Assembly (NCBI GenBank): GCA_000708835.1 | Contig: DF236950.1 | Span: forward strand, 287,355 to 351,354 | Direction of reading: 5' to 3' | From: Klebsormidium nitens | Lineage: Eukaryota; Plantae; Klebsormidiophyceae | DNA length: 64,000 nt | Shown here: positions 19,701 to 39,500 of the stretch, in pieces | How positions within the stretch are numbered: the stretch's first letter is position 1 | Layout of the letters: every line of letters begins with the position of its first letter | Notes under the pieces: model-generated | Told to the model about the DNA's origin: nothing | The model's database searches: none | What the model saw: only the letters and a program-made list of their open reading frames with translations | Translations under genes and position numbers: made by a program

Positions 19701-20559
19701 GATGCAAGGGATGAGCTGCTTCATCACCCACTAGGCCACCGGTCCGATCTGCATTATAAGCGCAGAGAGATTTCTGGATTGTCATCCACTATTGGCTTTT
19801 GAGTTTGTACTAAACAATAGAAACGAGTCCAGCGGATTCATGTCCTGTTAGTGATTTGAATAAATGGAAGAGAGTCGAAAAGCCTCCAGACACAGTGTTG
19901 GTCGTGCACCACTCTATCAAACCACAAAATGATAGCGGTCAAGCGATCAGTGTAGCTGTAGTCCAATTGGCGACAAGATCTGCAAGATCTGCAATTGCTT
20001 GCCCCACAACGAAATTCACCGCCTTTGCAAATCTAATAGTTTCTAACAGATTTCTCACAATTGCCCCAACAAACTGCTGGTTGGTGTGATGCAAAGGAGA
20101 CCAGCTGATCCTTGATTGAATTCAGATTGTCTGTGATTGGCATGCTTCACCTCTGGAGTTGATCCCAGGACCCAAGCCTCCGGGTTGCTCCATTGAGGGC
20201 GCCAACTCTTCCGCCAGGACTCTCTCCGGTCTAGTGTCATCCTCTGTAAGCGCTTGCCCCGGGATTGATTGCTCAGCAAAGTTATCTGGTGCGAAATGGT
20301 CTGGTACTGCAGAGCAGAGGCCAGTGGTCCCATACTGCCTGCACTGCATACTCTGCAGTAGAGCCCCATTTAGACTAGGCTGCTGTCGTATGCTGGGAGA
20401 GAATGCAGAAAGCGTTCGTGCTGCAGACATCAACAGCCCATCGCCTAGGAATGGGCTGATCGGAGTGCTAAGCTCTTGCACCCGATGCCTCCCCACTTCA
20501 TTGATCAACCTATTCAAACTAAGCGAGAAACCGCCAAGCGATCTGCGGAGGGCTGCCAT
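13796..20559 (-). CDS. HAD-superfamily 5'-nucleotidase, cN-II/NT5DC family, with an N-terminal organellar transit-peptide-like region; about 12 exons
   Basis: HAD motif I YGFDYDYTI (exon 18711-18844), RGLYYD, LLKLD, motif II KLFILTNSPFFFVDGGM, LFDVVIALADKPNWY, motif IV LYFGDHLYSDL, and C-terminal RYADVYTSKLENFL..PHHIK. The last exon 13796-13855 ends RRCI*. The first exon MAALRRSLGGFSLS is Arg/Ser/Leu-rich. Confidence 0.93.
16730..16774. repeat. 9-bp tandem repeat GAGCGGAAT-like x5 next to a 3' splice site of the nucleotidase gene
   Basis: GAGCGGATC GAGCGGAAT GAGCGGAAT GAGCGGAAG GAGCGGGGC. Confidence 0.85.
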
Positions 20560-21558
20560 ATCGTCTGAAAGAATGGATCATCTCTGGATTTGAAATAATC
20601 AATTCAGTACACGCACATTGCAGGCGATCACCAATGCAGATTTGGATGAAAGTTGTCACGAAACGGGACCTTAGGCTTTGAGATCTTCATTAGCGTCTGA
20701 ACAAGGTACTCAAGAACTCAGCATTTGGAGGCGTTATGGACTGCTTGGAGTAGGCCCGAGCTACCGGTACTGCAGCAGCTAGGCTTGCAAGCTGGAGCAG
20801 TGTAGTCTGCGAGATGAGTGAGACAACTTGAAGTTGAAGTGGAGAGCAGAGCTAGTGGCAGTGCGCTGATTCTGAACCAGAGCGGCGGTAGATCCATGCA
20901 AAGCTAGCTGCTGCTGACTCTGAGTCTGAGTCTGAGTCTGGCCTGGGCAACCGGACTACTGGCATTCACCAGCCGAAACAGCGCCGGCCGACTTCCGAGA
21001 GTCTCGGGCACGAGCTGTCTACTCTCGACGGTCAAGAGTTGTCCTGAGTCAATGAAGGTAACAACCAGGGCGGCTCTGGTTGACACGCGTCAGATGGGAG
21101 GAAGCAGAGTCAGCCCTTTAGCCAGCCCAGGAAGTTGCCAAGCTGGCACTTGCTGCAGCATTGGCATGCAGCTGGTACGGCCATGGCGGCCATTCCGGAG
21201 AAGAATTGGTGAAGACAAGGGCGCAGACGTATGTGCAAACGAGGAAAAGTGCATGAAAAAGCTCCTCCTCGTTTGCAGTAGGTAGGCACTGTCAGGAAAG
21301 TGACAAGAACTTACAGCTGCCAGAACTTACGGCTGCCCACAAAGGGCCTTCAAAATTTTGTAAGGAGGAAGGGTGAAAGAAGCTGCAAGTAACTGGCAAC
21401 TTTGATTTCGTGAAGGTGAAGAGTTTCCTTCATAAGGTTGCGGACATAGGTTCTGCTCCTGTTCTGCTTGTCGTTGTGGCATTGTGATTGGCAAGATCTC
21501 ATAGAGCTGGACCGGGTGCGGTACAGATCTCAGCAGCTCTCTTTGAGAACTCTGTTCT
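20560..21558. promoter_or_regulatory. Divergent (head-to-head) promoter region between the nucleotidase and UGT80 genes; contains a (CTGAGT)n microsatellite at 20914-20940
   Basis: Start codons at 20559 (-) and 21559 (+) face away from each other about 1 kb apart. Promoter function is inferred from position only. Confidence 0.6.
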
Positions 21559-24500
21559 ATGATGGCAGGGAGTGTGGGACACAACGCACCTACTAAAAAA
21601 GCAGAGGAGGAGTCACCTATTCCCCCCAATGCGACATTGTCTGAGCTGATTGGTGGGACGCCCTCAGAGTTTAGTTCTGGTGAAGGAGGAGGGGGTCCCN
21701 NNNNNNNNNNNNNNNNNNNNNNNNNNNNNNNNNNNNNNNNNNNNNNNNNNNNNNNNNNNNNNNNNNNNNNNNNNNNNNNNNNNNNNNNNNNNNNNNNNNN
21801 NNNNNNNNNNNNNNNNNNNNNNNNNNNNNNNNNNNNNNNNNNNNNNNNNNNNNNNNNNNNNNNNNNNNNNNNNNNNNNNNNNNNNNNNNNNNNNNNNNNN
21901 NNNNNNNNNNNNNNNNNNNNNNNNNNNNNNNNNNNNNNNNNNNNNNNNNNNNNNNNNNNNNNNNNNNNNNNNNNNNNNNNNNNNNNNNNNNNNNNNNNNN
22001 NNNNNNNNNNNNNNNNNNNNNNNNNNNNNNNNNNNNNNNNNNNNNNNNNNNNNNNNNNNNNNNNNNNNNNNNNNNNNNNNNNNNNNNNNNNNNNNNNNNN
22101 NNNNNNNNNNNNNNNNNNNNNNNNNNNNNNNNNNNNNNNNNNNNNNNNNNNNNNNNNNNNNNNNNNNNNNNNNNNNNNNNNNNNNNNNNNNNNNNNNNNN
22201 NNNNNNNNNNNNNNNNNNNNNNNNNNNNNNNNNNNNNNNNNNNNNNNNNNNNNNNNNNNNNNNNNNNNNNNNNNNNNNNNNNNNNNNNNNNNNNNNNNNN
22301 NNNNNNNNNNNNNNNNNNNNNNNNNNNNNNNNNNNNNNNNNNNNNNNNNNNNNNNNNNNNNCAGAGTTTAGTTCTGGTGAAGGAGGAGGGGGTCCCGGGG
22401 CGGCAGTTGCAGGCGTCGCCGCGAGTGGCTACGAAAGTGCTAAGTTGCCTGAGAGTTTGATCAGCGGTGCGAAGCAGGCTGCTCGCGAGTCCAAGGCCGA
22501 CGAGAACAAGGACGTTACCCCTGTGCCTGAGCAACCCCCTAGCCAGCCTGCGACTTTCTCCGACGCCGTGCCATATATCACCACACCCCTAGAAGCTCAG
22601 ACTGCCCCCAACGGGACGATGGCAGGGGACCCCAAGGCTGAGCTGGCGGCGGTGCCGGAGGGGATCCCACTTGCAAACGGTCAGGCGACAGGGATGCAAC
22701 TGGCAAGGCCTAAGCTGCAGCGGTCAGAATCGAAGATGGTGTCGGCGGTCAAGAACTGGAAGAAGGGAACAGAAAGGGTGAGCTGTTCATTCATGTGCTG
22801 AGTCTTATTGCTGAGGGAGGAAAGTGAAGTCTCTTGCAGGCTTTGTCTTCCCCAATGTGAAATGCCATAAAATGGACTTTTGTGTAGAAATGGCTCCCTG
22901 ATGACCAGGCATCAAACACACCAAGTCAGTGGTGTATAGCTCTGGGTCTTCATAAAGAACGTGCTTTCAAATGTAGCGGACTCTTGTCGCTTGGTTTTCC
23001 CTACACGCAGCGCCTCCTCAAGTTGTTCTTGTGGTGGAGCTGTACTTTCTAGGAGAAAGTTTGCGAACTTGGAAGAATCTGCACGATCAATTCTCACATT
23101 TTTCTTGTCTTGATTCAGATTTGGGGGGCATTTTCAAAAAAAGAGGTTTTCCCCGAATTGGGCGCCTTTTCAATGTATCTTTTCTTCTAAGTACCTGTTT
23201 TGTAACATGTTCAAAGTAACCAAGTGATGACAACATTACGCCCTTTTTGTGCGATTGCTTACAACTATCAGTAGATCTGGTTACTACAGTCCTTGTGTCT
23301 GGGCAGCATTTACTGATCTCTGTGGTTAGTTGTCTGAAGGAACCGCTTCTACTTGAAGAGCACGGGATCTTTACATCTTTCATCTTTCGCCCTGATCTTA
23401 CCCAAACACATTGTTGTCTCGACGCTTGTTCCTTAAACACCCATTCTCTTAAGCACTGATACCTGGGGCAGACGCATATTTCTATCTTTTGCTCTTAAGC
23501 CATCTTGGCTTTCAAGCGATATCAAAACCACATTTTCTCTTTAAAAAGGTATCACATTCTAAAGATGTCAGGGTTTCTCGCTTCCCAGGCGAAGATCCTC
23601 AAGAGGCTGGCGGCAGGGGCAACAGTTGCAGATGACTACGGGGTCTACTTTGACGATAAGAACCTGTCCAAGCACCACAACTTTGATGAGACGGATCAGT
23701 GTCAGTGGACCAGGCCGCAGTACGAGACGCTCAACGACGGCATGTGCCAGTCCCTCAGCATCTGCATCATGATTACTGGAACCCGGGGGGACGTGCAGCC
23801 GTTTGTCGCCATCGGACAGAAGCTCAAGGTACGGCGCCGGAACAACTTTATCTGCCAGGGTTGATTCCAAGTATTTCTGGGATATACAAATCGTCAAATC
23901 AAGCTGTTCAAGTCTGTGCAAGCTAGGTAAATTCGGCTGCACCAAGGATATGGTTCTTAAGGATCTGAGCCTTATCAACTCTCATCTGGCGGAGCAAGCA
24001 TTTGTGATTTATACACAGCAGGGGCGCCTCCTTAGCTAACCACTCTGGTTGACCTGCAGGAGTATGGTCATCGGGTGCGTTTGGCAACACATTCCAACTT
24101 CCGCGACTTTGTTGTCAAGGACGGGGGCCTTGAGTTTTACCCGCTAGGTGGAGACCCGAAGATCCTGGCCGCATGTGAGTGGGGAAGCTCGTTCATCTGG
24201 AGGCTGATTCCTTTCATCCACCGACTCGGCCAACAAGCATTTGCTTTGGACACATTGATTGCACATGTTTCAACCAATCGAAGGCCCCGTTTCTATCTTC
24301 GAAAGCAGTGTCGGCTGTTTCCTGAAGTGAGACAAGTGTGTGTTCACGCACTTGACGATCCTTATTGGTCGGCCAATCATCATGCAAGTCGTACTTCGAG
24401 AGTGTCCAACACGTCGTCACGCCTGTTCCATCCTTTTAACTCTTGGTTGCCGAAGCTTCGGAAGGCGCTTAACCTTATCGCTGCGGTTATCCAAAATCGC

Positions 24501-27500
24501 TCTCACACCAATCAATCAATCAATCATGCATTGCATCCTTTCTCAATCGGCGGTGTTAATAAAGTGCTCTCTCCGGATTCTCCGCAGACATGGTGAAGAA
24601 CAAGGGCATCATGCCGGCCAACCCCACCGACATCCCCGTCCAGCGCGCCCAGCTCAAGGCCATCATCAAATCCACGTACGCGGCGTGCATCAAGCCTGAC
24701 CCGGAGGGCGGCAAGCCCTTCACGGCAGACGCAATCATTGCAAACCCTGTTGCATACGGTGAGGCGCCCAGCTGCCTCAAGGTGGCGCTCAAGCTGATTC
24801 GAGATGCGTTTGCCATGGACCCCTGAGCATCTTAAGAGTGCTTCCTGAGAGTCAGTGCTTTCCGGAAGTCAGTGCTTCCATTGATTCGCTGCGTGCCTGC
24901 CGTCTTCCAACGTCATCAAACGGGGTTCTAGCCTCAACGACTTGCCTTGACATCGGATACCTGTACACTGCGCGACGAGTTTCGGCGATGGACAGTGCTC
25001 GTTACAGGTCCCAATTTGATAATCAAAAGTATTGTGCCAAACTCCCGTCCATCAAACCAATGATTCACTTGTGGCTCCGTCAAGCCGCTCTGGCAAGTGT
25101 CAGCTAATACGCGCGAGTTCCTCGTGGCAGGCCACATCCATGTCGCGGAGAAGATGAAGATTCCCCTTCACCTCTTCTTCACGATGCCCTGGAGCCCCAC
25201 CACCGCGTTTCCCCACCCCCTCACGCGGCCCTCCACTTTCTCTTTGGAAAGCAATTACGTAAGTACTGTCGACCTCAGCGTGGAATCCACCGGGTTAAAA
25301 AAGTCCGTATTCAAGATGCATATGGTGGTTCCGGTGGTGCAATCAGTGGCAAGCTCATATCGTTCTGAGCTCGAAACGGCAAGCTCGCTCCGTTCTGATC
25401 TTGGAATGGCAGGCTCCTCCCGTTGTGAGCTTCGCATCTAAACTCCGCGGTTCCCAAGGCGGTAGGCTCGTAGGAAGGTGCTCGCTGCAGATATTGTCAC
25501 GGCGAAAGGCCGCCGGTTTTGCATCCAGTGGCAATCTCCGCAGTCCTCTGTGCCGTCCATTCCCACATCAAGGCGCGCACAGCCCCCTATTCTCATGCAT
25601 CCAAACTTTTTCCCTCCTCCGCTTCGACCCAACCCTGACATATGCCTTGCTTACCCCCACAGATTACGAATACGACAGTTGACCACTTGAGGTTGAATGC
25701 TAAACACGCGCCTTCTCACCTCCCCAGATGACGTACACAATCATTGACTACTTGATGTGGCTCGGCACCAAGGGCATTATCAATGCGTTCCGGCGCAAGC
25801 AGTTGGGGCTCAAGCCGGTGGGCCTCATGGACCCCGGTTCGTCGCTCATTCACCAGAACAAGGTGCCCTTCGGCTACATCTGGAGCCCGTCCCTCGTGCC
25901 AAAGCCCAAAGGTGGGGACGCCTATTTATAAAACTTGGAATCATTGCGTTAACATTCGCCAACCTCTGGGAACCCGTTTGCAAGGTGCCTCAATACCTAC
26001 AACGAAGAAGAATGTTGAGAGGAGCCTTTTTCGCTTTTGGAAGCTTCTATTTCTGAGTTAGAGCTTGTCTTCGGCTGGGCTTTAGGGCTTGAAATGGTCG
26101 TGAGGGGTTTGAGGATCCCGTCATCCGTCATCGTCGAGCCAACAAGCGGCAATTCGTGTTTCTGTCTGTTGTTGAAAGCTGGCTTAGGTTTGCAAGTCGG
26201 CCAGGGATGTCGGAAAGGCGACCACGGATGAGGGTCGCCCAGTGAAGGTTCGTGTTCTGGTCGGGACTCTGCTAAACGATTGTCAAGTCGCCGATTTCTC
26301 CTTTTGTCTCCTTCAAAAGCTGTTCGTTTGGTCGCCCGATTGGAGCATCTGCGGTTGTTAGACGAAAGTGGTGCACTCATGGATTACCAAGGAGACGGAC
26401 TAACTGTCCGCTCAGCTGGCGATTCGCGAATGCTGTCACGTTTTTGGTACATAAGTGTTCTATCTTGGATTCTCCTCAAGGGCCGTTTGTTCGCTGTCAC
26501 GTGCAGACTGGGGCCCGCACATCGACGTTGTCGGGTTCTGCTTCCTGGACCTGGCCAAGAACTACAAGCCTGAACAAGAACTTGTGGACTTCCTCAAAGC
26601 GGGGCCCCCGCCCGTTTACATCGGGTTTGGCAGCCTGGTGAGGAGGTCTCTTCATTCCGCGCTTTACCAGACCAATAGGAACACATTATCTTTTGGTATC
26701 TCGACCAAAACCACCGGGCTTGACAGGTGGCACGTTCGTTGTAACTCTTGTGTGCAAGAGTTCTTAAGGTCCCTGTTTTCGTCGTCTTTGCAAGAGGCTT
26801 TGCCCTTTTTTCGTTACATCTGACAGCCTCTGGTTTCGCTCCCAACATTGCAGGCGGTTCCGCACCCTGAGAAGACGGTCCAGATCTTCTTGGATGCTCT
26901 CAAGAAGACGAACTCCCGGGGACTCATTTCCAAGGGCTGGGGAGAGCTGGGCGAAGGTGCGTTCACGCACGCTCGAATCTTGTTCTACAATAAAAGCACA
27001 CTCAAAATCCGCGCTGAAGGCGCACCGTTGTTAGTGTTTCAATCTTCTGCAAACTCGGTTCATACCCTGGCGCGATGATATACTCCCTGTGTTCGATCTG
27101 GTCCAAGTCGACCCCTTGTTTACCCCAATGCCGCTCGCAAGAAGAAGCGGAGACTGCAAGGGAGCGTGTATCATGATACAGTGTCTTTGCTCTGGTTAGA
27201 CGATAAACAGTAACCAGACATTTTGCTGAGTGGCGGTAGAAACGTTTGCCAGCGCCCCTCCGCGAAGGCATAAGACGTTTTCAACCCTTCAGTGGTCCTC
27301 AAGCATTGGGCCTGAGCATGTACTTATTTTAATAGTCTCAGTCGCGTGGGGATTCAAAGGCTCGAAGAAGTGAGCACCGTGCTGGCATGTCTACAGGGCT
27401 GGACATTCCGGACACGTGTATGCTGTTGGGCAACGTGCCGCACGACTGGCTCTTCACGCAGTGCCAAGCGGTGGTAAGCACTTACACGAATAGAAACGAC

Positions 27501-28812
27501 ATCGTAAACGCTCCATCTAGACATGACAGCCTGTTCTACACGACAGCGTGCCTTATTCCTGCTGCAGACTTCACGAAGGTATTGTCTTCTTGAGAATGGT
27601 TTGGGTTTTTTTGTTGTCTTAAATGAGCAGGCCAAGACCAGCGAGTGGGAGAAACTTTTCAAGTTAAGGAAAGCATGACAATGTGCATCGCTCTGTTGAT
27701 GGGACAGATGCAGTCAGGAGTGCTAAGAAAGCCTCCACTTGCTGTGTTGGCGGTTGTCCAAATCTCTTCTTACAGCGTCAAATGCGCAGAACTTGTGAAA
27801 TGTTGCTGAGTCGAGGTGGGCATTGACTACTAGTTCAAGGATGGAGGGCATGAATTTTGTGGGCCAAATGGAAGATCGCAAGGCAGCTTTCACAACCGGA
27901 AAGTCTGGGGTTTGGACAAGCGCATACTTTCTCGGTACGTCGCTTCTTTGCTCTTCGCATGGGACGCTTAGAAGAGTCGTGGGCTTCGAAGCCTCTTCCG
28001 AAGCTTTGCTCCGCCCGTTTTCTTGCAGATCCACCACGGGGGCGCAGGAACGACCGCGGCCGGGCTCAAGGCGGAATGCCCGACGACGGTGATCCCCTTC
28101 TTTGGTGACCAGCCGTTTTGGGGGGAGCGCTGCCACGCGCAAGGAGTGGGGCCCAAGCCCATCCCCATCGGGCGGGTCTCAGTGGACAACATCGTCGAGG
28201 CCATTGACTTCATGAAGAATCCGGAGGTGGGTTTGAGGGAAGGAAAGGAGGCGGGTGCTCCCGTTCCTGGAGCCGTTGCTAGAAGTGCGTTGTAATCTGC
28301 TCTGAGAGAATCTGTTGCGAAAGCAGCTGGCGCTCCGTGGTTTGCAAGACCTTCGACGTTTGGGTGTCTCATCGCCGGCAGATGCCGCTTTGGGCTAGGC
28401 TGAACGGACGCAATGCCCTCGCAAGCACGCCTCGTTTGTTTATCCTGACCTTTCACTGTTGCTTTCCCCGGTACGTACCAGACCACATGGTTCTACGAAA
28501 TATAGGACAAAATGTTGCGCTGCTCGAGCAGCTCGCTTCCGTGAGCTGCTCCAGTGATGCATTGCAGAGAGAAGAGGATGTCTCCGGAATCTCTGAGCCT
28601 CTTGCGTGCAGGTCAAGGAAAACGCGCGGAAGATGGCGGCCAAGATGCAGCAGGAGAACGGCGTGGAAGGGGCCGTGAAGGCGTTCCACAAGCACCTGCC
28701 CAAAAATCTCCGGTCCACGGAGATTGAGTGGGGACTCAGCAAATCGCGGAAAACTCAGTCGGGTCTGTTGTCTGCGTGTGCGTGTACGTCAACACCGAAG
28801 ACGGTGGATTAG
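21559..28812 (+). CDS. UGT80: Sterol 3-beta-glucosyltransferase, UGT80A/B type (GT1/GT28-N); about 11 exons
   Basis: Exons read [124 protein letters not shown] and [23 protein letters not shown]. The last exon ends TPKTVD* at 28812. Start is ATG 21559 or 21562. Confidence 0.96.
21700..22361. other. Assembly gap (662 N) flanked by an exact 35-bp duplication
   Basis: CAGAGTTTAGTTCTGGTGAAGGAGGAGGGGGTCCC occurs at 21665-21699 and again at 22362-22396. Confidence 1.
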
Positions 28813-30119
28813 CGGGCCGCAGGCTCCCGTCTATGCTTTGCAAAGCGTCCACTCCAAACACGGTGCATGATCAGCTGGCACTACGCTCGTGAGCATGCAA
28901 CGCATCAGCCGTTCATAGCGGCAGGCCTCAATAAGTGCTCTTTGAAATCTCAATTGGTCGCAAACTGAGGTGGAGAGTCCTGCGGAGATGTGCATATAGA
29001 TACTTCGGTAAACTTGAATTGCTTGCTAATCAAGGACTTTGTTGGTTAGTGGTCAGCTAGCAATAAGCTCGATCGGATAATCGAGCCAAGATTCTACACT
29101 GGCAAGAAAGTTATTAGGGTTGACCCTCTAGATCTGACTAACTGAAGCTTTTGAGCGGGATGCATGACCCGGGGAGTATGTTTGGGTCACTCCACCGAAA
29201 CCGGCAACACTCAGTGTTGCTACTGTTATTTTTTGTGGCAACATCATTTGACCACGAAATCTGCTGCAAAGTGGCAATAGCTGTCGTACTGTTCCGAACA
29301 CAAGATGTTGATCGATCTAAAATGTCACCTCAGCATATCACTTCTCAATCGGCTTCCCATGACATACATAGTGCTGTTCTATGACTCTCGTCCGCATGCC
29401 GGTCGAGCGGATAGCAGGCAGTGGTTCACCATGTATTCCAAAGCGTTTGACAACACGTACTTAATACGAGAGAAAGGCCTGATGCTTTTGAATCAATCAG
29501 ACTGAGATCGTATGCTCTGGCCCTGTACTGATTGCTTGATACTGTAGTAGACTGCAACAGAGGAGCTATCCACTCCTACCGCGTCACTGGTCAGCTTGGT
29601 CACGTCGGACTCATGCCTTCGCCCGCGTTGTACAGGTAGGACCTGCCTGTGCGCAGTGAGCGGTATAGGTAGGTATGCCCGAGTTGGTACCGGACTCGGG
29701 TACTTTTCCATGTGGCAGTAGTCAGTGACGATGTCGACACGGTCACTGTCCAGTGTCAGTTCGAAGATGTTGACATAGTCACTGTGAGTACTTCAGAGTC
29801 ATGGCCCATGCATGATGCGCCATATGGGCCATGGGTGATCCCGCTTCCCAGTGTTTCGGAACAATGGTACCTACACCGATGTTCACTGTTCTTATTAGGT
29901 ATGATCCTGAGTTGATAAGTCTGCAGAGCGCCTCTTCAAGCACTCATGAGTCATATGCTGAACTGCACGCAGCTCGACCTACCGCGTTGCATCTATCAGC
30001 ATAGACCTTGCATCGTCTAGCTTCACTCATTTGCCCAAGCTTGTATTGAAGACTGCAGCAAACTTTGAGCACCAGCAGCTCACAACGTCCACCCAAAGCT
30101 CCTAGGAGCCGTTGGCGCT

Positions 30120-33100
30120 ATGGCCTTACTCTCGCTTGCAGTTCCTCGGCTCCAATTGGTGTCTACACTCCTTGCGGTTCTCGTCCTGTTCCTAGCTGGC
30201 AGCGGGGCTCCAACCCCTGTCCTAGGGGCAAGTGACGATAAGGTGCAAGCTGCGGATGGCGCAGCCCTCCCCACAAGCTCACGTGGTTTGGAGCTGTTTC
30301 GTCAGCATGAGGTAAGCAACAGCGCTGAGCAGATTGCTGCGCTGTGCACTGAAAGGTACCAATATGGAGGACTACAAAGTCTCTTGGAAGCTTGTGAAAG
30401 GTTCCCATGTCACTCATGAGCCTTGGATAAAGTACTAAGCGCTCTTCAGCCAGCACGCTGATCACAGACAGGACTTGCTTATTGTGCAAAGAGCCACTTT
30501 TGGCTTCTGTATTGGCTGTGCATGTGCTCTTCCACCTGCATGGCTTCCTTCCAGCTGCTACTAGTAGTAAAAACAGTGAGCGCAAGCACGCTGGCTGGCC
30601 CCGGTCCTAAAGAATGTCCTACATTTAAAGCTTGGGCACCAGCAAATGCCCAGTCTGATATTTAGAGGGTGAGGTGGTTCTTTTGGCCCTTCGTATTTAA
30701 GAGCTCCACGTTTTCTAAAATCTGTTGATAGAGCTGAAAAGTACTCAGGCAATGGTGTTTGTAATGGCTGGCTGCAAAGCTGGAGGCCCTTCCGCCGTAA
30801 TTCAGTTTGATCAAGCTTGTATTGAACATGCATTGGGAGTCATGATTTCGAGGTTTTGATGCAGGGAATGAAGCCTCGTGCGCAGCTCTCGAACAGACGG
30901 CTCTTGCAGTCCATCCAATGTCCTGACGGTCAAGTCCAATGTCCCAGCGGCATCAAAGAGTGAGGGGTGTGGCTGTAGCCATGCTTTTCTTTCTATCTAA
31001 CCAAGGAAACGCTGCACTGTATCTCTATGTTTTATCCCACAACCTCGCACAGCAGAAGTGTGCTTTGCTCAATGCTTTCGTGGGTCATGTCACTCAAAGC
31101 GCGATGGATACATCAATTTCGCTGAGGATTTCCTCACGTTTTCGTCGTTGCAGTGGGCTGACCCCATAGCTCCGCAACCGACCCCGTACTGATCCACTCA
31201 GCCATAATTCTTCAGATTAGGAGACACTGTTCCGTCGACGTTCCTCGTGGCTAGTGCTGGCTCCATCCTGTTTGCTTCTTTTGTGCAGATGCTTTTATTC
31301 GAGTGGGCAGAACTGCAACGGCTATAACGGTAAGGTTGTCGAGAGAGCGCACTTTCTGTCCTCCTCAATCTTCCTGATCTCCCCAAAGAAGCGTGGTAGC
31401 CATGTGTTCTTAGGATCACCTGCGACAGAGACTTGAAGTCAAGACCTGTGTTGCTGGCGCTTTTCCACATGAGGTTCATATCAACAAGAATTGGATAAGA
31501 GTGTGGACAAAGGAGGTCTATCCAGCGCAATCTCAAGTACTGCCGTACGTTAGTCGGACTGGACCGCGGCAATCGGACTTGTGCTACCTTAACGTTCTTC
31601 TGTCGAGGCTGAACGCCGAATCGGTTACCTAAGGTCCAAGGAGTGTTCCTCGAGTCTGAAGCGATTGCTTCCCATAGTCTGCGCGATGCTCTTGAGTTTT
31701 TTTTTTCCTGATTAGATTAGGAGCATGCAGGATTCTTCGAAGCACGATGATCATCATTGAAAGAGGTAGATTCCAGTTTCCCTGTGTACCCCGATTTGCA
31801 AACACTTGTCATTCTTGTGGCCGCATTTGCAGACTGTTCCGACGGCAGCGAAGAGGACGACTACTACTGCGCAAACGTGTCCACCAGCTGCGTGTTCCCT
31901 CGGCTGAAGTGCCCCAGCCACAAGTGCTCCACCCAAAGCGTCATCAACGGCAAGTCGGGGGCAAACATTGTGAGCGCTCTCCCCATGAATATTAGACTGC
32001 TGCCGATGCGGGGGCAATGCGCCAAGACGCATCACTTCTTCATTTTCAAGAGTAGTAAACCACTGACTCTATGCAACAAATCGTGGGATAGCGCTTTCCC
32101 GCCTCGTTCTGCATAGAGCCAGTCGAAGGGGATTGCCTGAAGTGACTCAACATGGATTGTGAGGATTGTGTCAGATTTTGCTCTATAGTTCATAAGCAAC
32201 GCAGCGTGAAGCAATATCGATGAAGCACCCTAGTCTCTCTTTAACCCACAAGTGACACTGCTTGGCACTTCTATTTCTCCTCCTAACCCCGTTGCTAACC
32301 CGCATTTCCTCCTTCTCTGCAGTTCTGGTGCGATCGTACAAGTGAGCCCCTACTCTTCATCCGATCCCTCGCAATCTTTCGATTGTTTCGCACGGCTTGT
32401 CGAAGCGTGTAGACTGTGGTCAGAAACATTCTGATGTTCTGGTCATTCAAGCTTGAGCAGTCGTCTACGAAAACTGTTGCTGGTTACTTCTCCTGTCAAA
32501 GACGCTCTCTGAAGCTTGCCAGTCGTCCGCAAAAGCATAGCTGAACTTGTGCTTCCGCCGAGGTGATCAAAAGTGCACCCGGTTGGAACTTTTCTTGGTG
32601 TAAACATTTCTGAGTCCATTTGTGTGCCGCAGTATCTCTAAGATCGCATCCTCCTCCTGTTGATCCTACTTGCCAGTCGTAAGTCATAATTCTCAAGAAA
32701 GATATCAGTAAGCAAAGATAATAATAAGCTCCGACCAAACACTAAAAAACCCTAACCCAAAAAGATACCTGCTCCGCACCCATACCCGCCCTAACCACCA
32801 AACCAACCCTACCCGTCCGTCCCAGTCCGATTACCTGAGTATTATCTCGGCTTACTACTGTTACTTTCGTGAGTTCGAGTCGAAAGTCCCTTGCGCACGC
32901 GCCTACTCTAGTTCTTAAACCTTCCAAACCCGCGCGCTCCTCCAGCCGACTGCTTCGACAACAGCGACGAGGACCCCGCCTTTTGCGCGTCCTACGACTG
33001 CGCGAGCCAAGGCGCTGCGCGGTGCCCCGGGTCGATCCCCCAGTGCATGCCACGTGTCAGCACGAGGGTTGCCTACTTTTCAGGACGACCGTATCCCGGG

Positions 33101-34941
33101 ACGAACGGCCGCGGACAGACCTTTGGGCCCATTCCCGATGACGTCCCCACTGCCATGTGCGACGGGGTGAAGGATTGCGAGGTGGGCTTAGCATGACCGA
33201 CTAGATGAGGATACGTTGACCCACTTTTCTTTTCTCGGAGATGACCCGACGATTGCAGACTTCATTGCCTTGCAAAAGCTCGGATTTTCAGCCGTTGGGT
33301 TGCTGTCGCATGCTTTGCACGCTTCGCATGCTTTGCATCCCTTGATACAATCAGGTACCGACACAGGGAATGTTTGGAGTCAATTCGCCGATTAATTTAA
33401 CCAAAGCTGCCTCCGAAGCCCCATTCTGCGTTGTACCAAATCTGAGACGATCTCTTGGCCGGTGCATCGAACCCCCTCCTCACAACTTCGAAAGCCCTCC
33501 ACCACTTGGAAGCTCTGAAATTCGACGCCGAGTGACGGTCACGCCGCTTTGACGAATCAGAAAAAACCTACTCGAACTCCTAAGGAGAATCTTTACATGC
33601 GTTTAAATGACACGTGGGCCCTCCGCACCGCAACTGGGTGCAAGGCATCGAGTGATTCTGCGTCCGCCCCTTTCAGCTTAAAACAGGTTAAAGCTGGTAC
33701 AAAACTGGTTTCAACCTGGGTTAAAAGTGGTTTTCAACTGCCCTCCAGGACGGCAGCGACGAAGACTTCGAGCGCTGCTTTGGCCCGGGCCCGACCCGGC
33801 CACCCCCTATCGGACAGGGTGAGTGCATTCATAGGGGTTTAGGCCCTTGACCAAGGCTGGTTCTGGGCTTGTTCTGGGCTGCTTAGAAACTGGTCAAATG
33901 CCCAATGACCAGACTTGGGCGATAAACAGCCTTCGAACACGGTTAAAGCGCGGTTACGTGTCCAATGACATAACGCAAGAGTCAAGTCTAGTAGTCAGTC
34001 GTTTTAGCAGCCAAAACTTCCTGTGCATGTGGTGCCACACCTCACGAACCGCACCTTTCCAGACACTGCTTGCATTGCAGACTGGTCTTGGAGGTGCTTT
34101 CCGATTTGAGGTATTACTGGACCGTAGGTTCACTGAGGTTTTCCTTGAACGAGCTCGTCATGGGACTCTGGTAGCGGTGACTGTTTGCGCGCTTACACTT
34201 CGTAGTAGCACTTTCGATGCACCCTTTGGAAGTTCCAGTATGTCTTTGACAGAATTAACAGGTATCACCACTTCGATCTGCCGCCAAAGCAATGAACCGG
34301 CACTCGTTGTACAGCCGTCTCAGTTTCTCATCTTGTCGCACATCAAACTGCCGTCTCGTTATTTTCATCCAAGCTCCAAATCCACGATTTAACCGTGACC
34401 TAAACCCCGACCTCTTTTTCAAGCAGAACCGTCCCGTGGCCAAGTTTCAAACCCTCGGTGTTTCCTCCGCTAAACCCCGGCCTCTTCTCTTGGGCAGAGA
34501 CGTCCCATGCCAGAACTCGAACCCTCGGTTAACCCCTCCCCTAACCCCGGCAACACAGGTGTTTGTGGCTCGGGGCCCGCGTACTTCTTTCCCGTCCGCT
34601 GCTGGTTCAACAACGACCCCATGGGCCGCTACGTCTGCTGCGATGATGCGGGCTGCGATGGATTCAGCGCCTATGAGAACCTCGTTCCTCGCTGCAAAGT
34701 CAACGGCTACGCGCCTAAAAACTTTGGGCTTCCCGACGAGACGACCACATTCCCCAAGGAGACGACCACATTCCCCAAGGATACCCCCTGCCCCTTGGTG
34801 GGCGGTTTCGCCAGCAACAGCTGCTTCAGTTCCGACGGTTCGTACCACGTCTGCTGCGCCAACCCGGACTCGTGCGCCGCGCCTGGGGCAAACGGCGAGC
34901 CTCGCTGCACCAACGATAACTACGTTTTCTATAACCCGTGA
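30120..34941 (+). CDS. Secreted 390-aa protein: signal peptide, RRLL site, 3 LDL-receptor class A (LDLa) repeats, Pro linker, 2 copies of an unrecognised 6-Cys module
   Basis: Exons 30120-30311, 30865-30959, 31289-31329, 31833-31969, 32323-32341, 32946-33181, 33749-33818, 34559-34941. All junctions are GT-AG with matching phases (0,2,1,0,1,0,1) and total 1173 nt. Splicing creates CNGYNDCSDGSEE, WCDRTTDCFDNSDE and MCDGVKDCEDGSDE, which match the LDLa consensus C-D-G-x-x-D-C-x-D-G-S-D-E. Confidence 0.88.
34738..34779 (+). repeat. 21-bp coding tandem duplication (ETTTFPK x2) linking the two 6-Cys modules
   Basis: GAGACGACCACATTCCCCAAG occurs twice in tandem. Confidence 0.85.
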
Positions 34942-36585
34942 TTGCACAACCGCCAGGTTAGGATCAGATTGAGTGTACAGTGGTGTTGCTCGTCGAAGTA
35001 GAGTTCACGTCGTCCGCCCTGCTAGCAATTTTGCTCACATGCCACGCTGTTCCGACACATAAATGGTTGTATCGTTTTCGAGACACAGGCTAGAGCTAGG
35101 CATTGCCTTCCCCTCCTTGCGTTGTCAGGTTTTTCGTTGTAGCTGCGCTGGTTGATGAGACGTGTGTGGAGGTAGTTGCAGGACAATCAGGCAACCATTG
35201 TGAGTCCGCACCCAGGTAGACTAGAAAGCAAAGGTGTACTTTGCAAGCTTTAGTTTTTCCTGCAATCGAAGGTCTACCCCTACTTCTTTTCAACCTCGTC
35301 CCCGCACACACTTTTGCAGCATGCTTTCAGCTATTTTCTACATGAAATGCATCAGACTTAGAGTTTGAGTCTCGATCAACGGCACCCCCGTACTTCTCTG
35401 CGATGATCATTGTGACATGTCTTCGAAGACATGTCACAATCCGATAAACTGTTGAGATGCGGAGCTCTAATCTGCTTCCGTGCGGTGTGGTTCTTCCTCT
35501 GTACTTCGCGTGCGGGGCATGAATCTGGTCTGATGTTTAGTAGTCTGCAAATGTGCAATAAATCTACGATTCCTTCTCATCATCATGTTGAAAGACCTGA
35601 GTGCTCACGTTCGAGTGGCTTGATTTGTCGACGTTTTCGAGTTCTAGCTCGAGCTCGTGAGATTTCATTTGAGCAGAATGTTGTGACGTCCTTGACAACC
35701 ATCATACATCTTGCTTCAGAGGAAAAATGATGCACGAGAACGGCTGTCCCCATGCTGCTTCTAGCAATGCATTCTGGTGGTTGCTCCAGACTTGCGAAAG
35801 GGGACCCATGGGCGACTCATCCTAGCTCAAGGCTTCGTATCACACTTACGGCCCCGGGCGCGGGCCCGTTTCAATATTTTCATGGTCGATGAGTCCCAAT
35901 TTGTTTTGATTCTGAATGACTATAGAACATGACTTACTGCTGGCACACGACAATCTGGCGTAGTATCAAAATGCACGCTTGATTATGTCCATATAGCGAC
36001 GGTAGCTACGAATCTACATCGCAGTTGCCTGTGCGTGAAATTATTACATGTGCACCGTCTATCCATGGCGGCAGGCAATTATAGTATCTTTTATTAAGTT
36101 TGAAATTTGGGCGTAGTGACATGCAGTGACGCATGAGGCATGTCTAGTCATCGGTCCAAGTCGATCAGTTCAAGCTGGTGACATGCTATGTGGTTCTAAC
36201 TGCCCGCGGCATGCCGCCTGAGGAGCTAGTATGTCCTCATACATGTCACGTGTGCACCAGGGTGGCCGGCCGAACTTATGTGTGCGAATGCAAGCCTAAA
36301 GTTTTCTCAATCTTGTGTCGACCTGAACAAAACTAATACGCAGATTGCCAAGCGCGAGCATTGCAAGTCCGTTGTTTCTCGAACAACCCAGACCACCAAT
36401 AAATACTCCCAATTGCCAACGTTCTTGTGTCAAATTGTCCAAGGTAGACTCTACCTAAGCAAGCACGACTATCCTATTCTCATCAATACATAGAGTGCGA
36501 TTATACCAGAGGCGCAAGCCCCACTTTGACTCGGCACAACACTTTCGGACTCAACCATCTGCAAACATGCAGTAAGTACGTTCTC

Positions 36586-39500
36586 CTAAGTAACCACTTT
36601 CTGCTCCAACTGCCTCAACTGTTGCTCCATCTCGTCAACCCGCTGTGCCATTCCCCGGTGCTCCTCTCTCACTGCGAGAAGCTCCTCCTCCAACTCTTCC
36701 TTCTCCTCTTCGATCGTCTCCAAGCGCTCCAGCTGCCGGTTCAAAAAGTCCTCGGCCTGCTTCTGGGTCGCCATCGCCACTTCGTGCTGCTTGCGCTCCT
36801 CCTCTAGTTGCGCGCGCGCGCGCTCCTCTGCCTCTCGCAGGCGCGTCTCGAGGGCCTTCACCTTCTCCGAGCTCGCGCCCGTATCTTTCGCGGCCTTCTC
36901 GAGATCTTGCACCCGGGCCTTCACCGACGGACTTCTCACGAGGGGGGTTCTCTCCGCTTCCAACTCGCGGACCCTTTTCTCCGCCACCTGCAGCTTGGCC
37001 GCCGCGTCCGCGACCCGTTTCTCCGCTTTTCCAACGGACTCCCGAAGCTCTGAGCCCAGCTGCTGCGCCCGCGTCTCCGCCGTTGCGATCTTTGTCTCCG
37101 CCGCCTCCAGCGCTTCCTTCAGACCGCCCGCGTTATCACTCTGTTCCGCCAACGCCTTCTGCAGCTTTTGGATCTCCGTCTCCAAGTCTACCCTCTCCTT
37201 CTTCAATTCCGACAACTCCGCTGCCTGCTTACGACCCTCTTCCGATGTGCCCTCAGCTTCTGTCACCTTATCCACAGATCCATTCCGAGCCCCGACTTCC
37301 GCCTTCTCCAGCAACTTCCGAGTCTCCACTAGCTCGGCCCTCAAGTCTTCCAGTTCTGCCAAACCCTCCCTCGCTTCCGCCAACTCTCTTTCCAGAGCCT
37401 CGACTCTTTCCGCCGCGCCCGCCTCCTTCTTCAGCCGCTCCACCTCCCCCTGTAGCAGCGTCACCTCCTTCGCCGCCTCGTCGCACGCGTTCTTCCAGAC
37501 GGCCGACTCCTTCTCCAACCGCTCCACGGCCTCCCGCTTCTCCCGCTTTGCATCGTCCACCTCCCGCTGCAAGCCCTTCCTCACTTGGACCGCATCCGCT
37601 ATATCTTTCTGCAAACCCTTCACTTTGGTAGCGCTTTCCGTTGCCCCTCGTTTCAGCGTTTCAAGCTCGCGCTGCCAGCCCTTGGCCTCCTCCGTCTCGC
37701 GCTCCAGCTTTTTTATGAGCCCGTTGCTGCTCTGGAGCTCGCGCTTCAAGCTGTCGAGGTCCTTGAGCTTGCCGCGGTTGTCCTCGATCTCCTTTTGCAG
37801 CTTGATTGCCCGGCTGGCCGCGATGCTCAGCTCCTTCTTCACACCGTCCAACTCGCGCTGCGAAAACGAACCGGCGACCATTACATGCTAACCGGAGTGT
37901 TAACTTGTCCGATTTTTGATCATCCATTCAGATTCAGATCCTTAGGAAGAGCATGCGTGCCAGGTAATGTTCATTGTTCGTGAGCATCGCGCTTATTGGG
38001 ATCTTAGGATTTTGTTGCCTCTTTGAGACCAATCTCGTCCAAGAGGAACGAATTACCCTTGAAGCCGGAAGGGCGAGGCAGCACGGATGATGTTCAGACT
38101 GCAAACGCCGCAAGAAAAGCCCACTTGCTGTCCTGCCAGGCCTGCACCTTTTTGAAGGCCACAAGGTTGTACGTTAAAGACGGAATGAACATAAAAGGTT
38201 TACGAAACTTGGTAGATGCTTTGTCTTCGCGAGGCAAGCGGATCACTTGTTGCACGCACCTGGACGGTCTTCCTCTCCTCGGCGTACTCCTTCTCTAGGT
38301 TGCGGACCTTCCCGCGCGCGTCATGCAGCTCCTGCTTCACCGCGTCTAGTTCCTTTTGCCGTGCCCGGGGGCTCTCTTCCTTCGCCAGCAGCCGCAGCTG
38401 GCCCCGCGCCTCCAACAGTTCCGCCCGCAGGAAGTCCGTCTCATCCACCTTGGCCTTGCTCTCCGCCGCCTGTGTCTCCAGCTCGTCGACCCGGATCTTG
38501 GCCGCAAAAAGCTCCGCCTCTAGTTCCCCCTTGAATCGAGTCGCCTCTTCAGAATCAGCCTCCGCCCGCCGCAGCTGGTCCTGAAGATCAGAGACCCGGT
38601 TCTCATTGTCGGCAGTGACCCGGTCGAGCTCCGAGCGAACGATTTCTAGCTCTGCGGCCCGCCCCGAGCTCTGGAGCAGCTCGATGTTGAGCAACTCGAT
38701 CGTGCCTCTGGCTTCTTCTAACTCTTCCTGCAGGGCCGCGACCTCCGCTTTAGAATCGTCACCTTGGTCCTGGCTCTCGCTAGCCACTTGGGCCTCCAAC
38801 TCCGAGACCCGTTTCTCAAGAACCGCGCGCTGATCGCCGTCCGCTTTCTGGGCGCTTTCCGCGCTCTCAACCGTCTTCCGAAGCTCGCCCACCTTTCCTT
38901 CCAACTCTTTCATCGCCGCTCGCTCTTTTTCCAGCTCCACGAGCGCCGCCGCGGCCCTCTCCTTCGCGCCCGCCTCCGCCGTTTCGAGCTCTTTGCTCCG
39001 CTGCTTCGCGGTCTCCAACTCCTCCGTCAGCTTTTCTAACCCGGCCTGCTTCTCGTCGACCAAGTTCGAGAGCCGTGAGGCTTCTGACTCGAGGTCTGAC
39101 AATCTGCTGGCCACTCCCTTGACCGCCTGGGCCACTTTCACGTCCTTGAGCATTCCCCCGTTGGGTTTGTTCTCAGGAGAGGTAGGCGGCTGCGAGCTTG
39201 ACCTCGGCAGGACTGACTTTGGGTCGCGCACGGTGTCGCCCAGCTTCTCTTGCAGGAGCTGGAGGGTGTCCGTCTGCGAAGCACGCTCTTGCGCAACAGC
39301 CGCCTGCGGAAGACACGAGGCTTTGTGGATTCGGAGTGTACTCAGGGGATCACCAACACTTCTTCAGCTTTTTGATCTGTGCAGAATCTTGCACTCAGTT
39401 GTTGCCCCTCCCTGTTACTCTGTTCTTGGATCCGAGGATCTTCCAGAAAGAGAACCAGGAAATCAACCTTGTTTGGGCCCTGCTTCCAGATATAGAATCT

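What the first reader, a model, noticed from the sequence alone, without database searches (positions are those of the whole stretch)
30120..33818. Secreted protein with three LDL-receptor class A repeats in a plant-lineage genome, invisible in the ORF track
Seen: only after splicing 8 exons do three 6-Cys modules appear: CPDGQVQCPSGIKECFYSSGQNCNGYNDCSDGSEEDDYYC, CVFPRLKCPSHKC-x16-CDRTTDCFDNSDEDPAFC and CASQGAARCPGSIPQC-x37-CDGVKDCEDGSDEDFERC. Established: the acidic D-C-x-D-x-S-D-E cluster is the Ca2+ cage of LDLa modules, best known from animal lipoprotein receptors and complement proteins; to my knowledge they are not a normal feature of land-plant proteomes. The C3-C4 loop grows 7, 16, 37 residues, and repeat 1 has CNG/SEE substitutions. 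There is no TM helix, so the protein should be soluble and extracellular. Inference: an undescribed Ca2+-dependent ligand-binding protein (basic peptides, lipoproteins, microbes) in an alga, either an ancestral eukaryotic module lost in land plants or acquired horizontally.
Basis: partly seen in the sequence, partly recalled or inferred. Interest (0 to 1): 0.78.

Follow-up and report, generated by a model that had tools for sequence, protein, structure and literature searches.

The report
Secreted LDLa-repeat protein in Klebsormidium
This expressed gene of the streptophyte alga Klebsormidium nitens encodes a secreted protein with three divergent LDL-receptor class A calcium-binding repeats, and it belongs to an unstudied family found in several streptophyte algae but in no land plant among the hits I could list.

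Summary
Eight GT-AG exons (30120-34941, + strand) encode a 390-residue protein. Spliced transcript contigs from four studies confirm the exons, and the protein is identical to the public record KFL_000010510 ('hypothetical protein', Klebsormidium nitens).

The protein has a signal peptide, three 6-Cys modules and no other hydrophobic segment. PF00057 (LDLa) is the only Pfam family recovered for the three modules. It stays below Pfam's cut-off (13.6-20.7 bits per module against 24.1).

Membership rests on transitive homology. The protein is 45% identical (E 2e-36) to the K. nitens paralogue KFL_000370120, which scores 178 bits on PF00057. The two genes share intron positions through modules 1-3, including a 19-nt micro-exon. 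Profile comparison with canonical modules gives 96-98% probability.

The module is not a one-off in the green lineage. Multi-LDLa secreted proteins occur in Coleochaete, Chara (two species) and Closterium, all uncharacterised. This favours old, vertical presence in streptophyte algae over recent transfer.

Exon 8 adds two Cys-rich modules of a narrow family, mostly Klebsormidium proteins, with no Pfam, PDB or fold match. Function is inferred only: a Ca2+-dependent extracellular adaptor.

The parts
29917..30119 (+). 5' UTR (minimum extent; two contigs run beyond 29900)
   Evidence: Transcript contigs start at 29917/29919 or run over the edge of the laid stretch.
30120..30311 (+). Exon 1: start codon, signal peptide (hydrophobic core about residues 5-30) and a low-complexity stretch to residue 64
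   Evidence: highest Kyte-Doolittle windows at residues 5-17, none elsewhere; joint 30311/30865 in 4 runs.
30865..30959 (+). Exon 2: start of LDLa module 1 (C1, C2; shared CPSGIK motif)
31289..31329 (+). Exon 3 (41 nt): C3 and C4 of module 1
31833..31969 (+). Exon 4: C5-C6 of module 1 (DCSDGSEE), one N-x-S sequon, C1-C3 of module 2
32323..32341 (+). Exon 5: 19-nt micro-exon (FWCDRT plus 1 nt), C4 of module 2
   Evidence: The contigs have exactly 19 letters between the pieces laid on exons 4 and 6. P0004 residues 156-161 match. The paralogue gene has a micro-exon of the same size and position.
32946..33181 (+). Exon 6: C5-C6 of module 2 (DCFDNSDE), C1-C5 of module 3 including the 37-residue C3-C4 loop
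33749..33818 (+). Exon 7: DGSDE and C6 of module 3, then a Pro-rich linker
34559..34941 (+). Exon 8: A-type Cys module (residues 265-about 319), tandem 21-nt repeat encoding ETTTFPK twice (34738-34779), B-type Cys module (34780-34938), stop codon 34939-34941
30919..31870 (+). LDLa module 1 (residues 83-122, spacing 6-6-7-5-10), split by introns 2 and 3
   Evidence: PF00057 18.7 bits over profile positions 2-35. hhalign 97.7%, E 2.5e-12, 38 of 38 columns. Best PDB match is the LDLa module of erythrocruorin linker L1, 2gtl_M.
31889..32986 (+). LDLa module 2 (residues 129-175, spacing 6-4-16-5-10), split by introns 4 and 5
   Evidence: PF00057 13.6 bits over profile positions 19-35. hhalign 96.9%, E 1.5e-10, 36 columns with a 10-residue insert. 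PDB matches 1d2l and 1f5y.
32999..33778 (+). LDLa module 3 (residues 180-250, spacing 7-6-37-5-10), split by intron 6
   Evidence: PF00057 20.7 bits over profile positions 21-37. hhalign 95.7%, E 9.5e-9, C-terminal half only. PDB match is a VLDLR module.
34942..35280 (+). 3' UTR
   Evidence: Transcript contigs end at 35272-35281 in all four runs.

Best explanation
The locus is an intact, transcribed nuclear gene of Klebsormidium nitens (public model KFL_000010510). It encodes a 390-residue, 30-cysteine protein with a signal peptide, three tandem divergent LDL-receptor class A modules, a short Pro-rich linker, and two Cys-rich modules (A-type and B-type) of a narrow family made up mostly of Klebsormidium proteins. 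Shown here: the gene structure, its expression, homology to bona fide PF00057 proteins, the lack of any membrane segment, and membership of a family of secreted LDLa-array proteins found in Klebsormidium, Coleochaete, Chara and Closterium. Inferred: each module folds around one Ca2+ ion held by the C4-[D/N]-x3-D-C5-x-D-x-S-D-E cluster, which is complete in modules 2 and 3. Module 1 has N after C4 and SEE in place of SDE. As in animal LDLa modules, this acidic pocket would bind lysine or arginine side chains of a partner in a Ca2+-dependent way. The long C3-C4 loops (16 and 37 residues) sit between the N-terminal hairpin and the Ca2+ lobe and are probably flexible. The C-terminal A and B modules also occur in K. 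nitens secreted proteins that carry EGF-like modules and Pro-rich spacers. I therefore propose, at low confidence, that they tether the protein in the cell wall or extracellular matrix, making it an extracellular adaptor rather than an endocytic receptor.
For: Gene model and expression. Identity with the public K. nitens protein. LDLa assignment: PF00057 is the only family recovered for each of the three modules. All eight PDB sequence hits are LDLa modules. hhalign against canonical modules gives 95.7-97.7% probability. The protein is 45% identical (E 2e-36) to paralogue P0044, which scores 178.5 bits on PF00057. It is colinear with the first three modules of the Coleochaete proteins (E 4e-16). 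All ESM Atlas look-alikes are PF00057 clusters, which counts only as a lead. Old nuclear history: intron positions through modules 1-3 are the same as in the paralogue gene, including the 19-nt micro-exon. Relatives are encoded on Mb-scale Chara and Closterium contigs. The 21 best local BLAST hits among the fetched proteins are all streptophyte algae. Secretion: there is a single N-terminal hydrophobic segment and no C-terminal one. C-terminal family: 28 representatives among 1.84 billion proteins, most of them K. nitens proteins or unnamed environmental sequences, and one is a stand-alone secreted 161-aa protein.
Against: Pfam's curated cut-off is not reached (19 bits for the whole protein, 13.6-20.7 per module, against 24.1). 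Exon-by-exon scans gave nothing. The AlphaFold model of the LDLa region was unusable (mean pLDDT 32), so neither fold nor disulfide pattern was verified. Module 1 has substitutions at two cage positions, and modules 1 and 3 lack the aromatic residue two positions before C4. Ca2+ binding, ligand and location are entirely untested. The wall-anchor role of the A and B modules is a guess based on the architecture of their relatives.
Confidence: 0.8

Rival explanations
1. The three modules are not LDLa homologues but an unrelated acidic 6-Cys repeat that only mimics the D-x-S-D-E motif.
For: Pfam scores are below the gathering cut-off. Modules 2 and 3 match only the C-terminal half of the HMM. The structure model failed.
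Against: The protein is 45% identical over 180 residues to a paralogue with nine PF00057 stretches and 178.5 bits. Module 1 aligns over all 38 columns of a canonical-module profile. All eight PDB sequence hits are LDLa modules.
Confidence: 0.04
2. The gene is a recent horizontal acquisition from an animal, or an assembly contaminant.
For: LDLa modules are best known from animals. No land-plant protein appears among the 120 listed relatives.
Against: The gene has seven GT-AG introns that cut inside modules, not between them. A paralogue on another scaffold has the same intron positions. Neighbouring genes in the window are also split into many short ORF pieces, as expected for intron-rich nuclear DNA. 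Relatives occur in Coleochaete, two Chara species and Closterium and rank above animal proteins. Spliced transcripts appear in four independent studies of the alga.
Confidence: 0.05
3. It is an endocytic lipoprotein-type receptor working like LDLR, VLDLR or LRP.
For: It carries a tandem array of ligand-binding type A modules.
Against: It has no transmembrane segment and no cytoplasmic tail. No YWTD propeller (PF00058) or EGF-precursor region was found.
Confidence: 0.03
4. It is a decaying, functionless short copy of the 703-residue paralogue.
For: It has only three modules against about thirteen. Module 1 has a degenerate cage (N after C4, SEE), and Pfam scores are weak.
Against: The reading frame is intact across eight exons and all 30 cysteines come in module-sized sets. 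The fully spliced transcript is assembled at roughly ten times the depth of the intron-containing contigs in four studies. It has gained an A-type module that the paralogue lacks.
Confidence: 0.08

Closest known systems
Klebsormidium nitens KFL_000370120 (P0044, 703 aa, 'hypothetical protein')
   Same: Both have a signal peptide and the same first three modules (one canonical, two loop-expanded), 45% identical. Intron positions are the same, including the 19-nt micro-exon. The paralogue has a Pro-rich stretch and a short B-like Cys motif at its C-terminus.
   Different: The paralogue has about thirteen modules and scores 178.5 bits on PF00057. It has a canonical CDG...SDE cage in module 1 and no A-type module. 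Its B-like tail is truncated (hhalign 85% over 21 columns).
Multi-LDLa secreted proteins of Coleochaete scutata, Chara braunii, Chara vulgaris and Closterium sp. (all uncharacterised)
   Same: The Coleochaete proteins P0030-P0032 and Chara P0046 have an N-terminal signal peptide followed by a canonical module 1. The CPSGIK motif is shared with Coleochaete. Their modules 2 and 3 are also enlarged, though partly in other loops, and the region is colinear over about 180 residues.
   Different: They carry 3 to 12 PF00057 stretches, and none of those read has the A and B modules. Some Chara entries carry EGF-like or SRCR labels from UniRef.
LDL-receptor class A modules of animal LDLR/VLDLR/LRP (PDB 1f5y, 1d2l, 8ua8)
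   Same: Six cysteines and the acidic cage C-D-x3-D-C-x-D-x-S-D-E. Short four- or five-residue linkers join successive modules.
   Different: The animal receptors add YWTD propellers, EGF modules, a membrane anchor and an NPxY tail. From established knowledge, their modules usually have 6-7 residues between C3 and C4 and are typically encoded one per exon. Here the loops are 16 and 37 residues and introns cut inside the modules.
Annelid erythrocruorin linker chain L1 (PDB 2gtl_M, 4v93)
   Same: It is the best solved-structure match to module 1 (E 0.005). It is a secreted, non-receptor protein in which an LDLa module serves assembly rather than endocytosis.
   Different: It has a single LDLa module flanked by a coiled coil and a beta-barrel. 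It is otherwise unrelated.

Membership tests
LDL-receptor class A module (Pfam PF00057) | Score at or above Pfam's gathering cut-off (24.1 bits) | tested here: not met
   The whole protein scores 19.0 bits. Modules scanned alone score 18.7, 13.6 and 20.7 bits. PF00057 is still the best family for each.
LDL-receptor class A module (Pfam PF00057) | Six cysteines with canonical spacing (about 6, 4-6, 6-7, 5, 8-10) | tested here: inconclusive
   Module 1 has 6-6-7-5-10, which is met. Modules 2 and 3 keep every spacing except C3-C4, which is 16 and 37 residues.
LDL-receptor class A module (Pfam PF00057) | Acidic Ca2+-cage residues: [D/N] after C4, D before C5, D-E of S-D-E | tested here: met
   The cage is complete in modules 2 (CDRTTDCFDNSDE) and 3 (CDGVKDCEDGSDE). 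Module 1 has CNGYNDCSDGSEE. The N after C4 also occurs in PF00057-positive proteins fetched here (P0030, P0031, P0033, P0034). The SEE is unusual.
LDL-receptor class A module (Pfam PF00057) | Demonstrable homology to accepted members | tested here: met
   BLASTP E 2e-36 to P0044 (PF00057 178.5 bits) and E 4e-16 to Coleochaete P0031 (149.9 bits). hhalign gives 95.7-97.7% against a profile of canonical modules. That profile includes the Coleochaete counterparts of module 1, so the test is partly circular for that module.
LDL-receptor class A module (Pfam PF00057) | Two-lobe fold with disulfides C1-C3, C2-C5, C4-C6 | tested here: inconclusive
   AlphaFold2 on a 4-sequence alignment gave mean pLDDT 32. 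The ESM Atlas's own low-confidence model resembles PF00057 clusters at TM 0.32-0.45.
LDL-receptor class A module (Pfam PF00057) | Ca2+ binding required for folding and ligand binding | not testable with these tools
   This needs recombinant protein.
LDL receptor family of endocytic receptors (LDLR, VLDLR, LRPs) | YWTD beta-propeller and EGF-precursor region, one transmembrane helix, cytoplasmic NPxY | tested here: not met
   No PF00058 or EGF hit. The only hydrophobic segment is the signal peptide.
Unnamed A/B Cys-rich module family, mostly Klebsormidium proteins | About 50-residue module with six Cys including a CC doublet. A-type has the motif NNDPxGRYVCCDxxGCDGF and B-type has NSCFxxxGxxHVCCxNPDSC. 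| tested here: met
   Exon 8 matches 28 representatives among 1.84 billion proteins (best non-self E 1e-55). Alignments A1, A4 and A5 show invariant cysteines. There is no Pfam family.
Hevein / chitin-binding type 1 (PF00187), considered only because of a C-G...C...CC-x3-G-C pattern | Match to the family profile or fold | tested here: not met
   No Pfam hit at E up to 10. There was no PDB profile hit for the A module. No fold match in PDB by Foldseek or VIA-align, or in the Atlas.

The most novel reading that the evidence does not exclude
Streptophyte algae keep an old, expanded family of secreted LDLa-array proteins that land plants lost. Its first modules form a structurally new, loop-expanded LDLa subclass, with 16-37-residue inserts between the hairpin and the Ca2+ lobe, conserved in position between the Klebsormidium paralogues and with counterparts in Coleochaete and Chara. 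In Klebsormidium this unit is fused to a new Cys-rich fold specific to the lineage, giving a Ca2+-dependent extracellular adaptor of the algal wall or matrix with no land-plant counterpart.
Probability: 0.3. Interest if true: 0.6.

Novelty: new variant of a known kind. Interest (0 to 1): 0.45.

Why it matters
LDLa modules are usually treated as part of the animal extracellular toolkit. Here a genome-encoded, intron-rich, expressed family of them turns up in four classes of streptophyte algae, the closest relatives of land plants. Chara and Coleochaete each have eight to ten or more paralogues. No land-plant member appears among the relatives I could list, and none of the papers I could search mentions the family. 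If the absence from land plants holds up, this is a clear case of an extracellular Ca2+-dependent binding module lost around the origin of land plants. It would also give a handle on how the algal extracellular matrix differed from the plant wall. The window gene is the shortest member found here, with three modules, which makes it a convenient one to express and test. Its C-terminal modules are a family without any known fold.

Tried and rejected
1. An exon-by-exon Pfam scan gave no LDLa hit. Every module is split by introns, so this says nothing about membership.

I searched exon 8 by reference and obtained the database's own 390-aa record, P0004, which I then used as the reference. In one search I only located each exon's translation inside P0004.

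3. AlphaFold2 of residues 76-262 on a four-sequence alignment failed (pLDDT 32), so no fold search was run on it.

4. The C-terminal model (pLDDT 64) found nothing in PDB by Foldseek (best E 2.0). VIA-align against 48,161 chains found no Z of 2 or more. The ESM Atlas gave TM 0.38 or less.

5. PDB profile searches with the A and B module alignments gave nothing for A and two non-significant rows for B (best E 0.052).

6. Homology between the A and B modules is only suggestive (hhalign 37%, E 3.5e-4).

7. Ten literature searches found no paper on LDLa domains in Klebsormidium, Chara, streptophytes or green algae. Two of them were badly designed and returned only general algal papers.

8. I rejected the readings as hevein-like, as an LDLR-type receptor, as contamination or recent transfer, and as a pseudogene. 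Reasons are under the rivals and the membership test.

9. I built no module phylogeny. Repeats of about 40 residues with unclear orthology would not give a trustworthy root.
Full report
**1. What is in the sequence**

Reading 29800-38200 on the + strand gives eight exons with GT..AG introns of 329-740 nt. The exons are 30120-30311, 30865-30959, 31289-31329, 31833-31969, 32323-32341, 32946-33181, 33749-33818 and 34559-34941. The C3-C4 gaps are 7, 16 and 37 residues (Cys positions).

The reading frame continues in exon 8 for 126 more codons, to a stop at 34939-34941. The ORF list shows only short pieces, so the gene is indeed invisible without splicing. The motif [DN]-C-x-[DN]-x-S-[DE]-E occurs three times in this gene and nowhere else in the six frames of the window.

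**2. Transcripts**

One search for runs and one laying of contigs on 29900-35899, which is 6,000 letters, gave spliced contigs of 1,040-1,739 nt in four runs from four studies. The runs carry two organism labels, and the contigs are 99-100% identical to the window.

Five joints are listed with GT..AG ends: 30311/30865, 30959/31289, 31329/31833, 33181/33749 and 33818/34559. The 19-nt exon 5 is too short to be laid. However, every full contig has exactly 19 letters between the pieces laid on exons 4 and 6 (for example record 16, positions 668 to 688).

Low-depth contigs (3-6 against 21-63) lie in introns and across the intron 7/exon 8 boundary, so a minor unspliced fraction exists. Transcripts end at about 35272-35281. 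The runs are only guessed to be RNA, but spliced contigs can only come from RNA.

**3. Getting a reference for the whole protein**

Exon-wise Pfam scans were blank, as expected because introns cut every module. The word search with exon 8 found three short relatives.

The protein was still unexplained, so I used the single exhaustive search with exon 8. It returned P0004, 390 aa and 100% identical to exon 8. P0004 contains all eight exon translations in order, and the four split codons agree. Its sources name it 'hypothetical protein KFL_000010510 [Klebsormidium nitens]', with no precomputed Pfam domain.

It also shows that the gene model is already public, though unnamed.

**4. Are the modules LDLa?**

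On P0004, PF00057 is the only family with a hit, at 19 bits against a cut-off of 24.1. Scanned one at a time, the modules gave these results:

| Module | PF00057 score (bits) | Profile positions matched | hhalign probability | hhalign E-value | hhalign columns aligned |
|---|---|---|---|---|---|
| 1 | 18.7 | 2-35 | 97.7% | 2.5e-12 | all 38 |
| 2 | 13.6 | 19-35 | 96.9% | 1.5e-10 | 36, with a 10-residue insert |
| 3 | 20.7 | 21-37 | 95.7% | 9.5e-9 | 20 (columns 19-38, the Ca2+ lobe) |

By Pfam's own rule, membership is therefore not met. Three other lines of evidence say the modules are nevertheless homologous.

- **Solved structures.** All eight hits among solved structures are LDLa modules: erythrocruorin linker L1, LRP CR3, LDLR LA1-2, VLDLR and Tva.
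- **Profile comparison.** I built a profile from 15 canonical modules cut out of PF00057-positive proteins (A3). The hhalign results are in the table above. A3 contains the Coleochaete counterparts of module 1, so that first figure is partly circular.
- **Paralogue.** Residues 71-250 are 45% identical (E 2e-36) to the K. nitens paralogue KFL_000370120 (P0044), which scores 178.5 bits with nine PF00057 stretches.

The structural test failed. AlphaFold2 on four sequences gave mean pLDDT 32. The ESM Atlas look-alikes are all PF00057 clusters but at lead-level scores only.

**5. The Ca2+ cage**

From established knowledge of LDLR module 5, the ion is held by side chains after C4, before C5 and in S-D-E, plus two backbone carbonyls. 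Modules 2 and 3 have all four acidic side chains.

Module 1 has N after C4. This is also seen in PF00057-positive proteins fetched here. It also has S-E-E in place of S-D-E. An aromatic residue two positions before C4 is present only in module 2. Ca2+ binding itself is inferred, not shown.

**6. The family in the green lineage**

A search with the Coleochaete relative P0031, followed by look-ups of names, shows PF00057 arrays in several streptophyte algae:

- Coleochaete scutata: at least eight transcripts.
- Chara braunii: at least ten genes, on contigs of 1-3 Mb.
- Chara vulgaris: at least one.
- Closterium sp. Naga37s-1: three, on contigs of 2.5-5.4 Mb.
- K. nitens: two.

All are named hypothetical or uncharacterised. 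These proteins rank above all but one of the animal proteins in that search. The exceptions are the three Closterium proteins and one short Chara protein, which fall among the animal rows. In a local BLAST of residues 76-256 against everything fetched, the 21 best hits are streptophyte algae before the first animal. That set was chosen by similarity to a Coleochaete query, so the ranking is indicative only.

The first three modules are colinear in Klebsormidium, Coleochaete and Chara: a canonical module 1 followed by enlarged modules 2 and 3.

The paralogue gene (locus L003, scaffold DF236986.1) has introns at the same positions through modules 1-3, including a 19-nt micro-exon. The introns cut inside modules. 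This differs from the one-module-per-exon layout of animal LDLR genes, which I cite from established knowledge.

Together these results argue for an old, vertically inherited nuclear family. It is at least as old as the split between Klebsormidiophyceae and the Chara/Coleochaete/Zygnematophyceae lineage. They argue against recent transfer or contamination. No land plant is among the 120 listed hits out of 551. That is suggestive, not proof. Chlorophytes were not tested.

**7. The C-terminal third**

Exon 8 holds an A-type module (core motif NNDPxGRYVCCDxxGCDGF). It is followed by a tandem 21-nt repeat encoding ETTTFPK twice, and then by a B-type module (core motif NSCFxxxGxxHVCCxNPDSC). Each module has six cysteines.

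Only 28 representatives among 1.84 billion proteins match. They are K. nitens paralogues (KFL_005790050, _000240060, _002360050, _000210210, _008230020) and unnamed environmental or transcript sequences. In those proteins the modules follow EGF-like modules and Pro-rich spacers, or they form small secreted proteins on their own (P0002, P0020, P0023).

There is no Pfam family, no significant PDB sequence match and no fold match. The model itself is only middling, at pLDDT 64. A and B may be related to each other (hhalign 37%, E 3.5e-4). The paralogue P0044 ends in a truncated B-like motif (85%, E 5.8e-6 over 21 columns). An LDLa array followed by a B-like tail may therefore predate the duplication.

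**8. How it probably works**

Shown: the protein has a signal peptide, 30 cysteines in module-sized sets, no membrane segment and no hydrophobic C-terminus.

Inferred: it is a secreted, Ca2+-stabilised extracellular protein. Its LDLa triplet offers acidic pockets for basic side chains of a partner. Its A and B modules tie it to the wall or matrix, or to itself. It is not an LDLR-type endocytic receptor.

I put the identity (a secreted, divergent LDLa protein of a streptophyte-algal family) at about 0.8, and the adaptor function at about 0.3.

**9. Novelty**

The module is known, and the family is already detectable in public databases through automatic Pfam hits. This particular protein had escaped that labelling. 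Three things are new relative to described systems:

- the loop-expanded modules;
- the fusion to an undescribed family of Cys-rich modules found mostly in Klebsormidium;
- the lack of any paper on LDLa proteins in streptophyte algae in the library I could search (ten searches).

Noticed in passing
window 31399-31858, 32323-32712, 33456-34587: Low-depth contigs (3-6 against 21-63 for the spliced form) lie inside introns 3, 5, 6 and 7. One reads from exon 5 straight into intron 5, and one crosses the intron 7/exon 8 acceptor. A minor unspliced or intron-retaining fraction of this transcript is therefore present in all four runs.
   Followed up: partly
window 32745-32779 (intron 5): A 35-nt C-rich stretch is shared with other transcripts. 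Contigs of two runs match only here and continue with unlike sequence on both sides, and one of them carries an A>G difference at 32782. It is probably a short dispersed repeat.
   Followed up: no
L003 1501-7700 (K. nitens scaffold DF236986.1): The 703-aa LDLa paralogue KFL_000370120 spans about 10 kb. Through modules 1-3 it has the same intron positions as the window gene, including a 19-nt micro-exon (YLCDGV plus 1 nt).
   Followed up: partly
L001 5230-6685 (JGI metagenome contig Ga0590115_0000871, 103 kb): Three A-type Cys modules lie in tandem within 1.5 kb of a eukaryote-like environmental contig. No LDLa motif occurs in the 12 kb fetched. This is probably a Klebsormidium-like alga carrying a three-module A-type paralogue.
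   Followed up: partly
window 24075-28300 (+): ORF pieces upstream give sub-threshold Pfam hits to Glyco_transf_28 (N-terminal part) and EryCIII-like_C. This is consistent with a GT1/GT28-type, perhaps sterol, glucosyltransferase gene split by introns.
   Followed up: partly
window 36586-39231 (-): Two long minus-strand ORFs (431 and 343 aa) encode Glu/Lys/Ala-rich coiled-coil sequence with only weak coiled-coil-type Pfam hits. They account for the strong negative GC skew at 36-44 kb.
   Followed up: no
window 34738-34779: A perfect tandem duplication of 21 nt in exon 8 encodes ETTTFPK twice in the linker between the A and B modules. The paralogue P0010 has a single copy of a similar stretch.
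   Followed up: no
window 20001-24000: G+C drops to 0.41-0.44, against 0.49-0.56 in the rest of the window.
   Followed up: no
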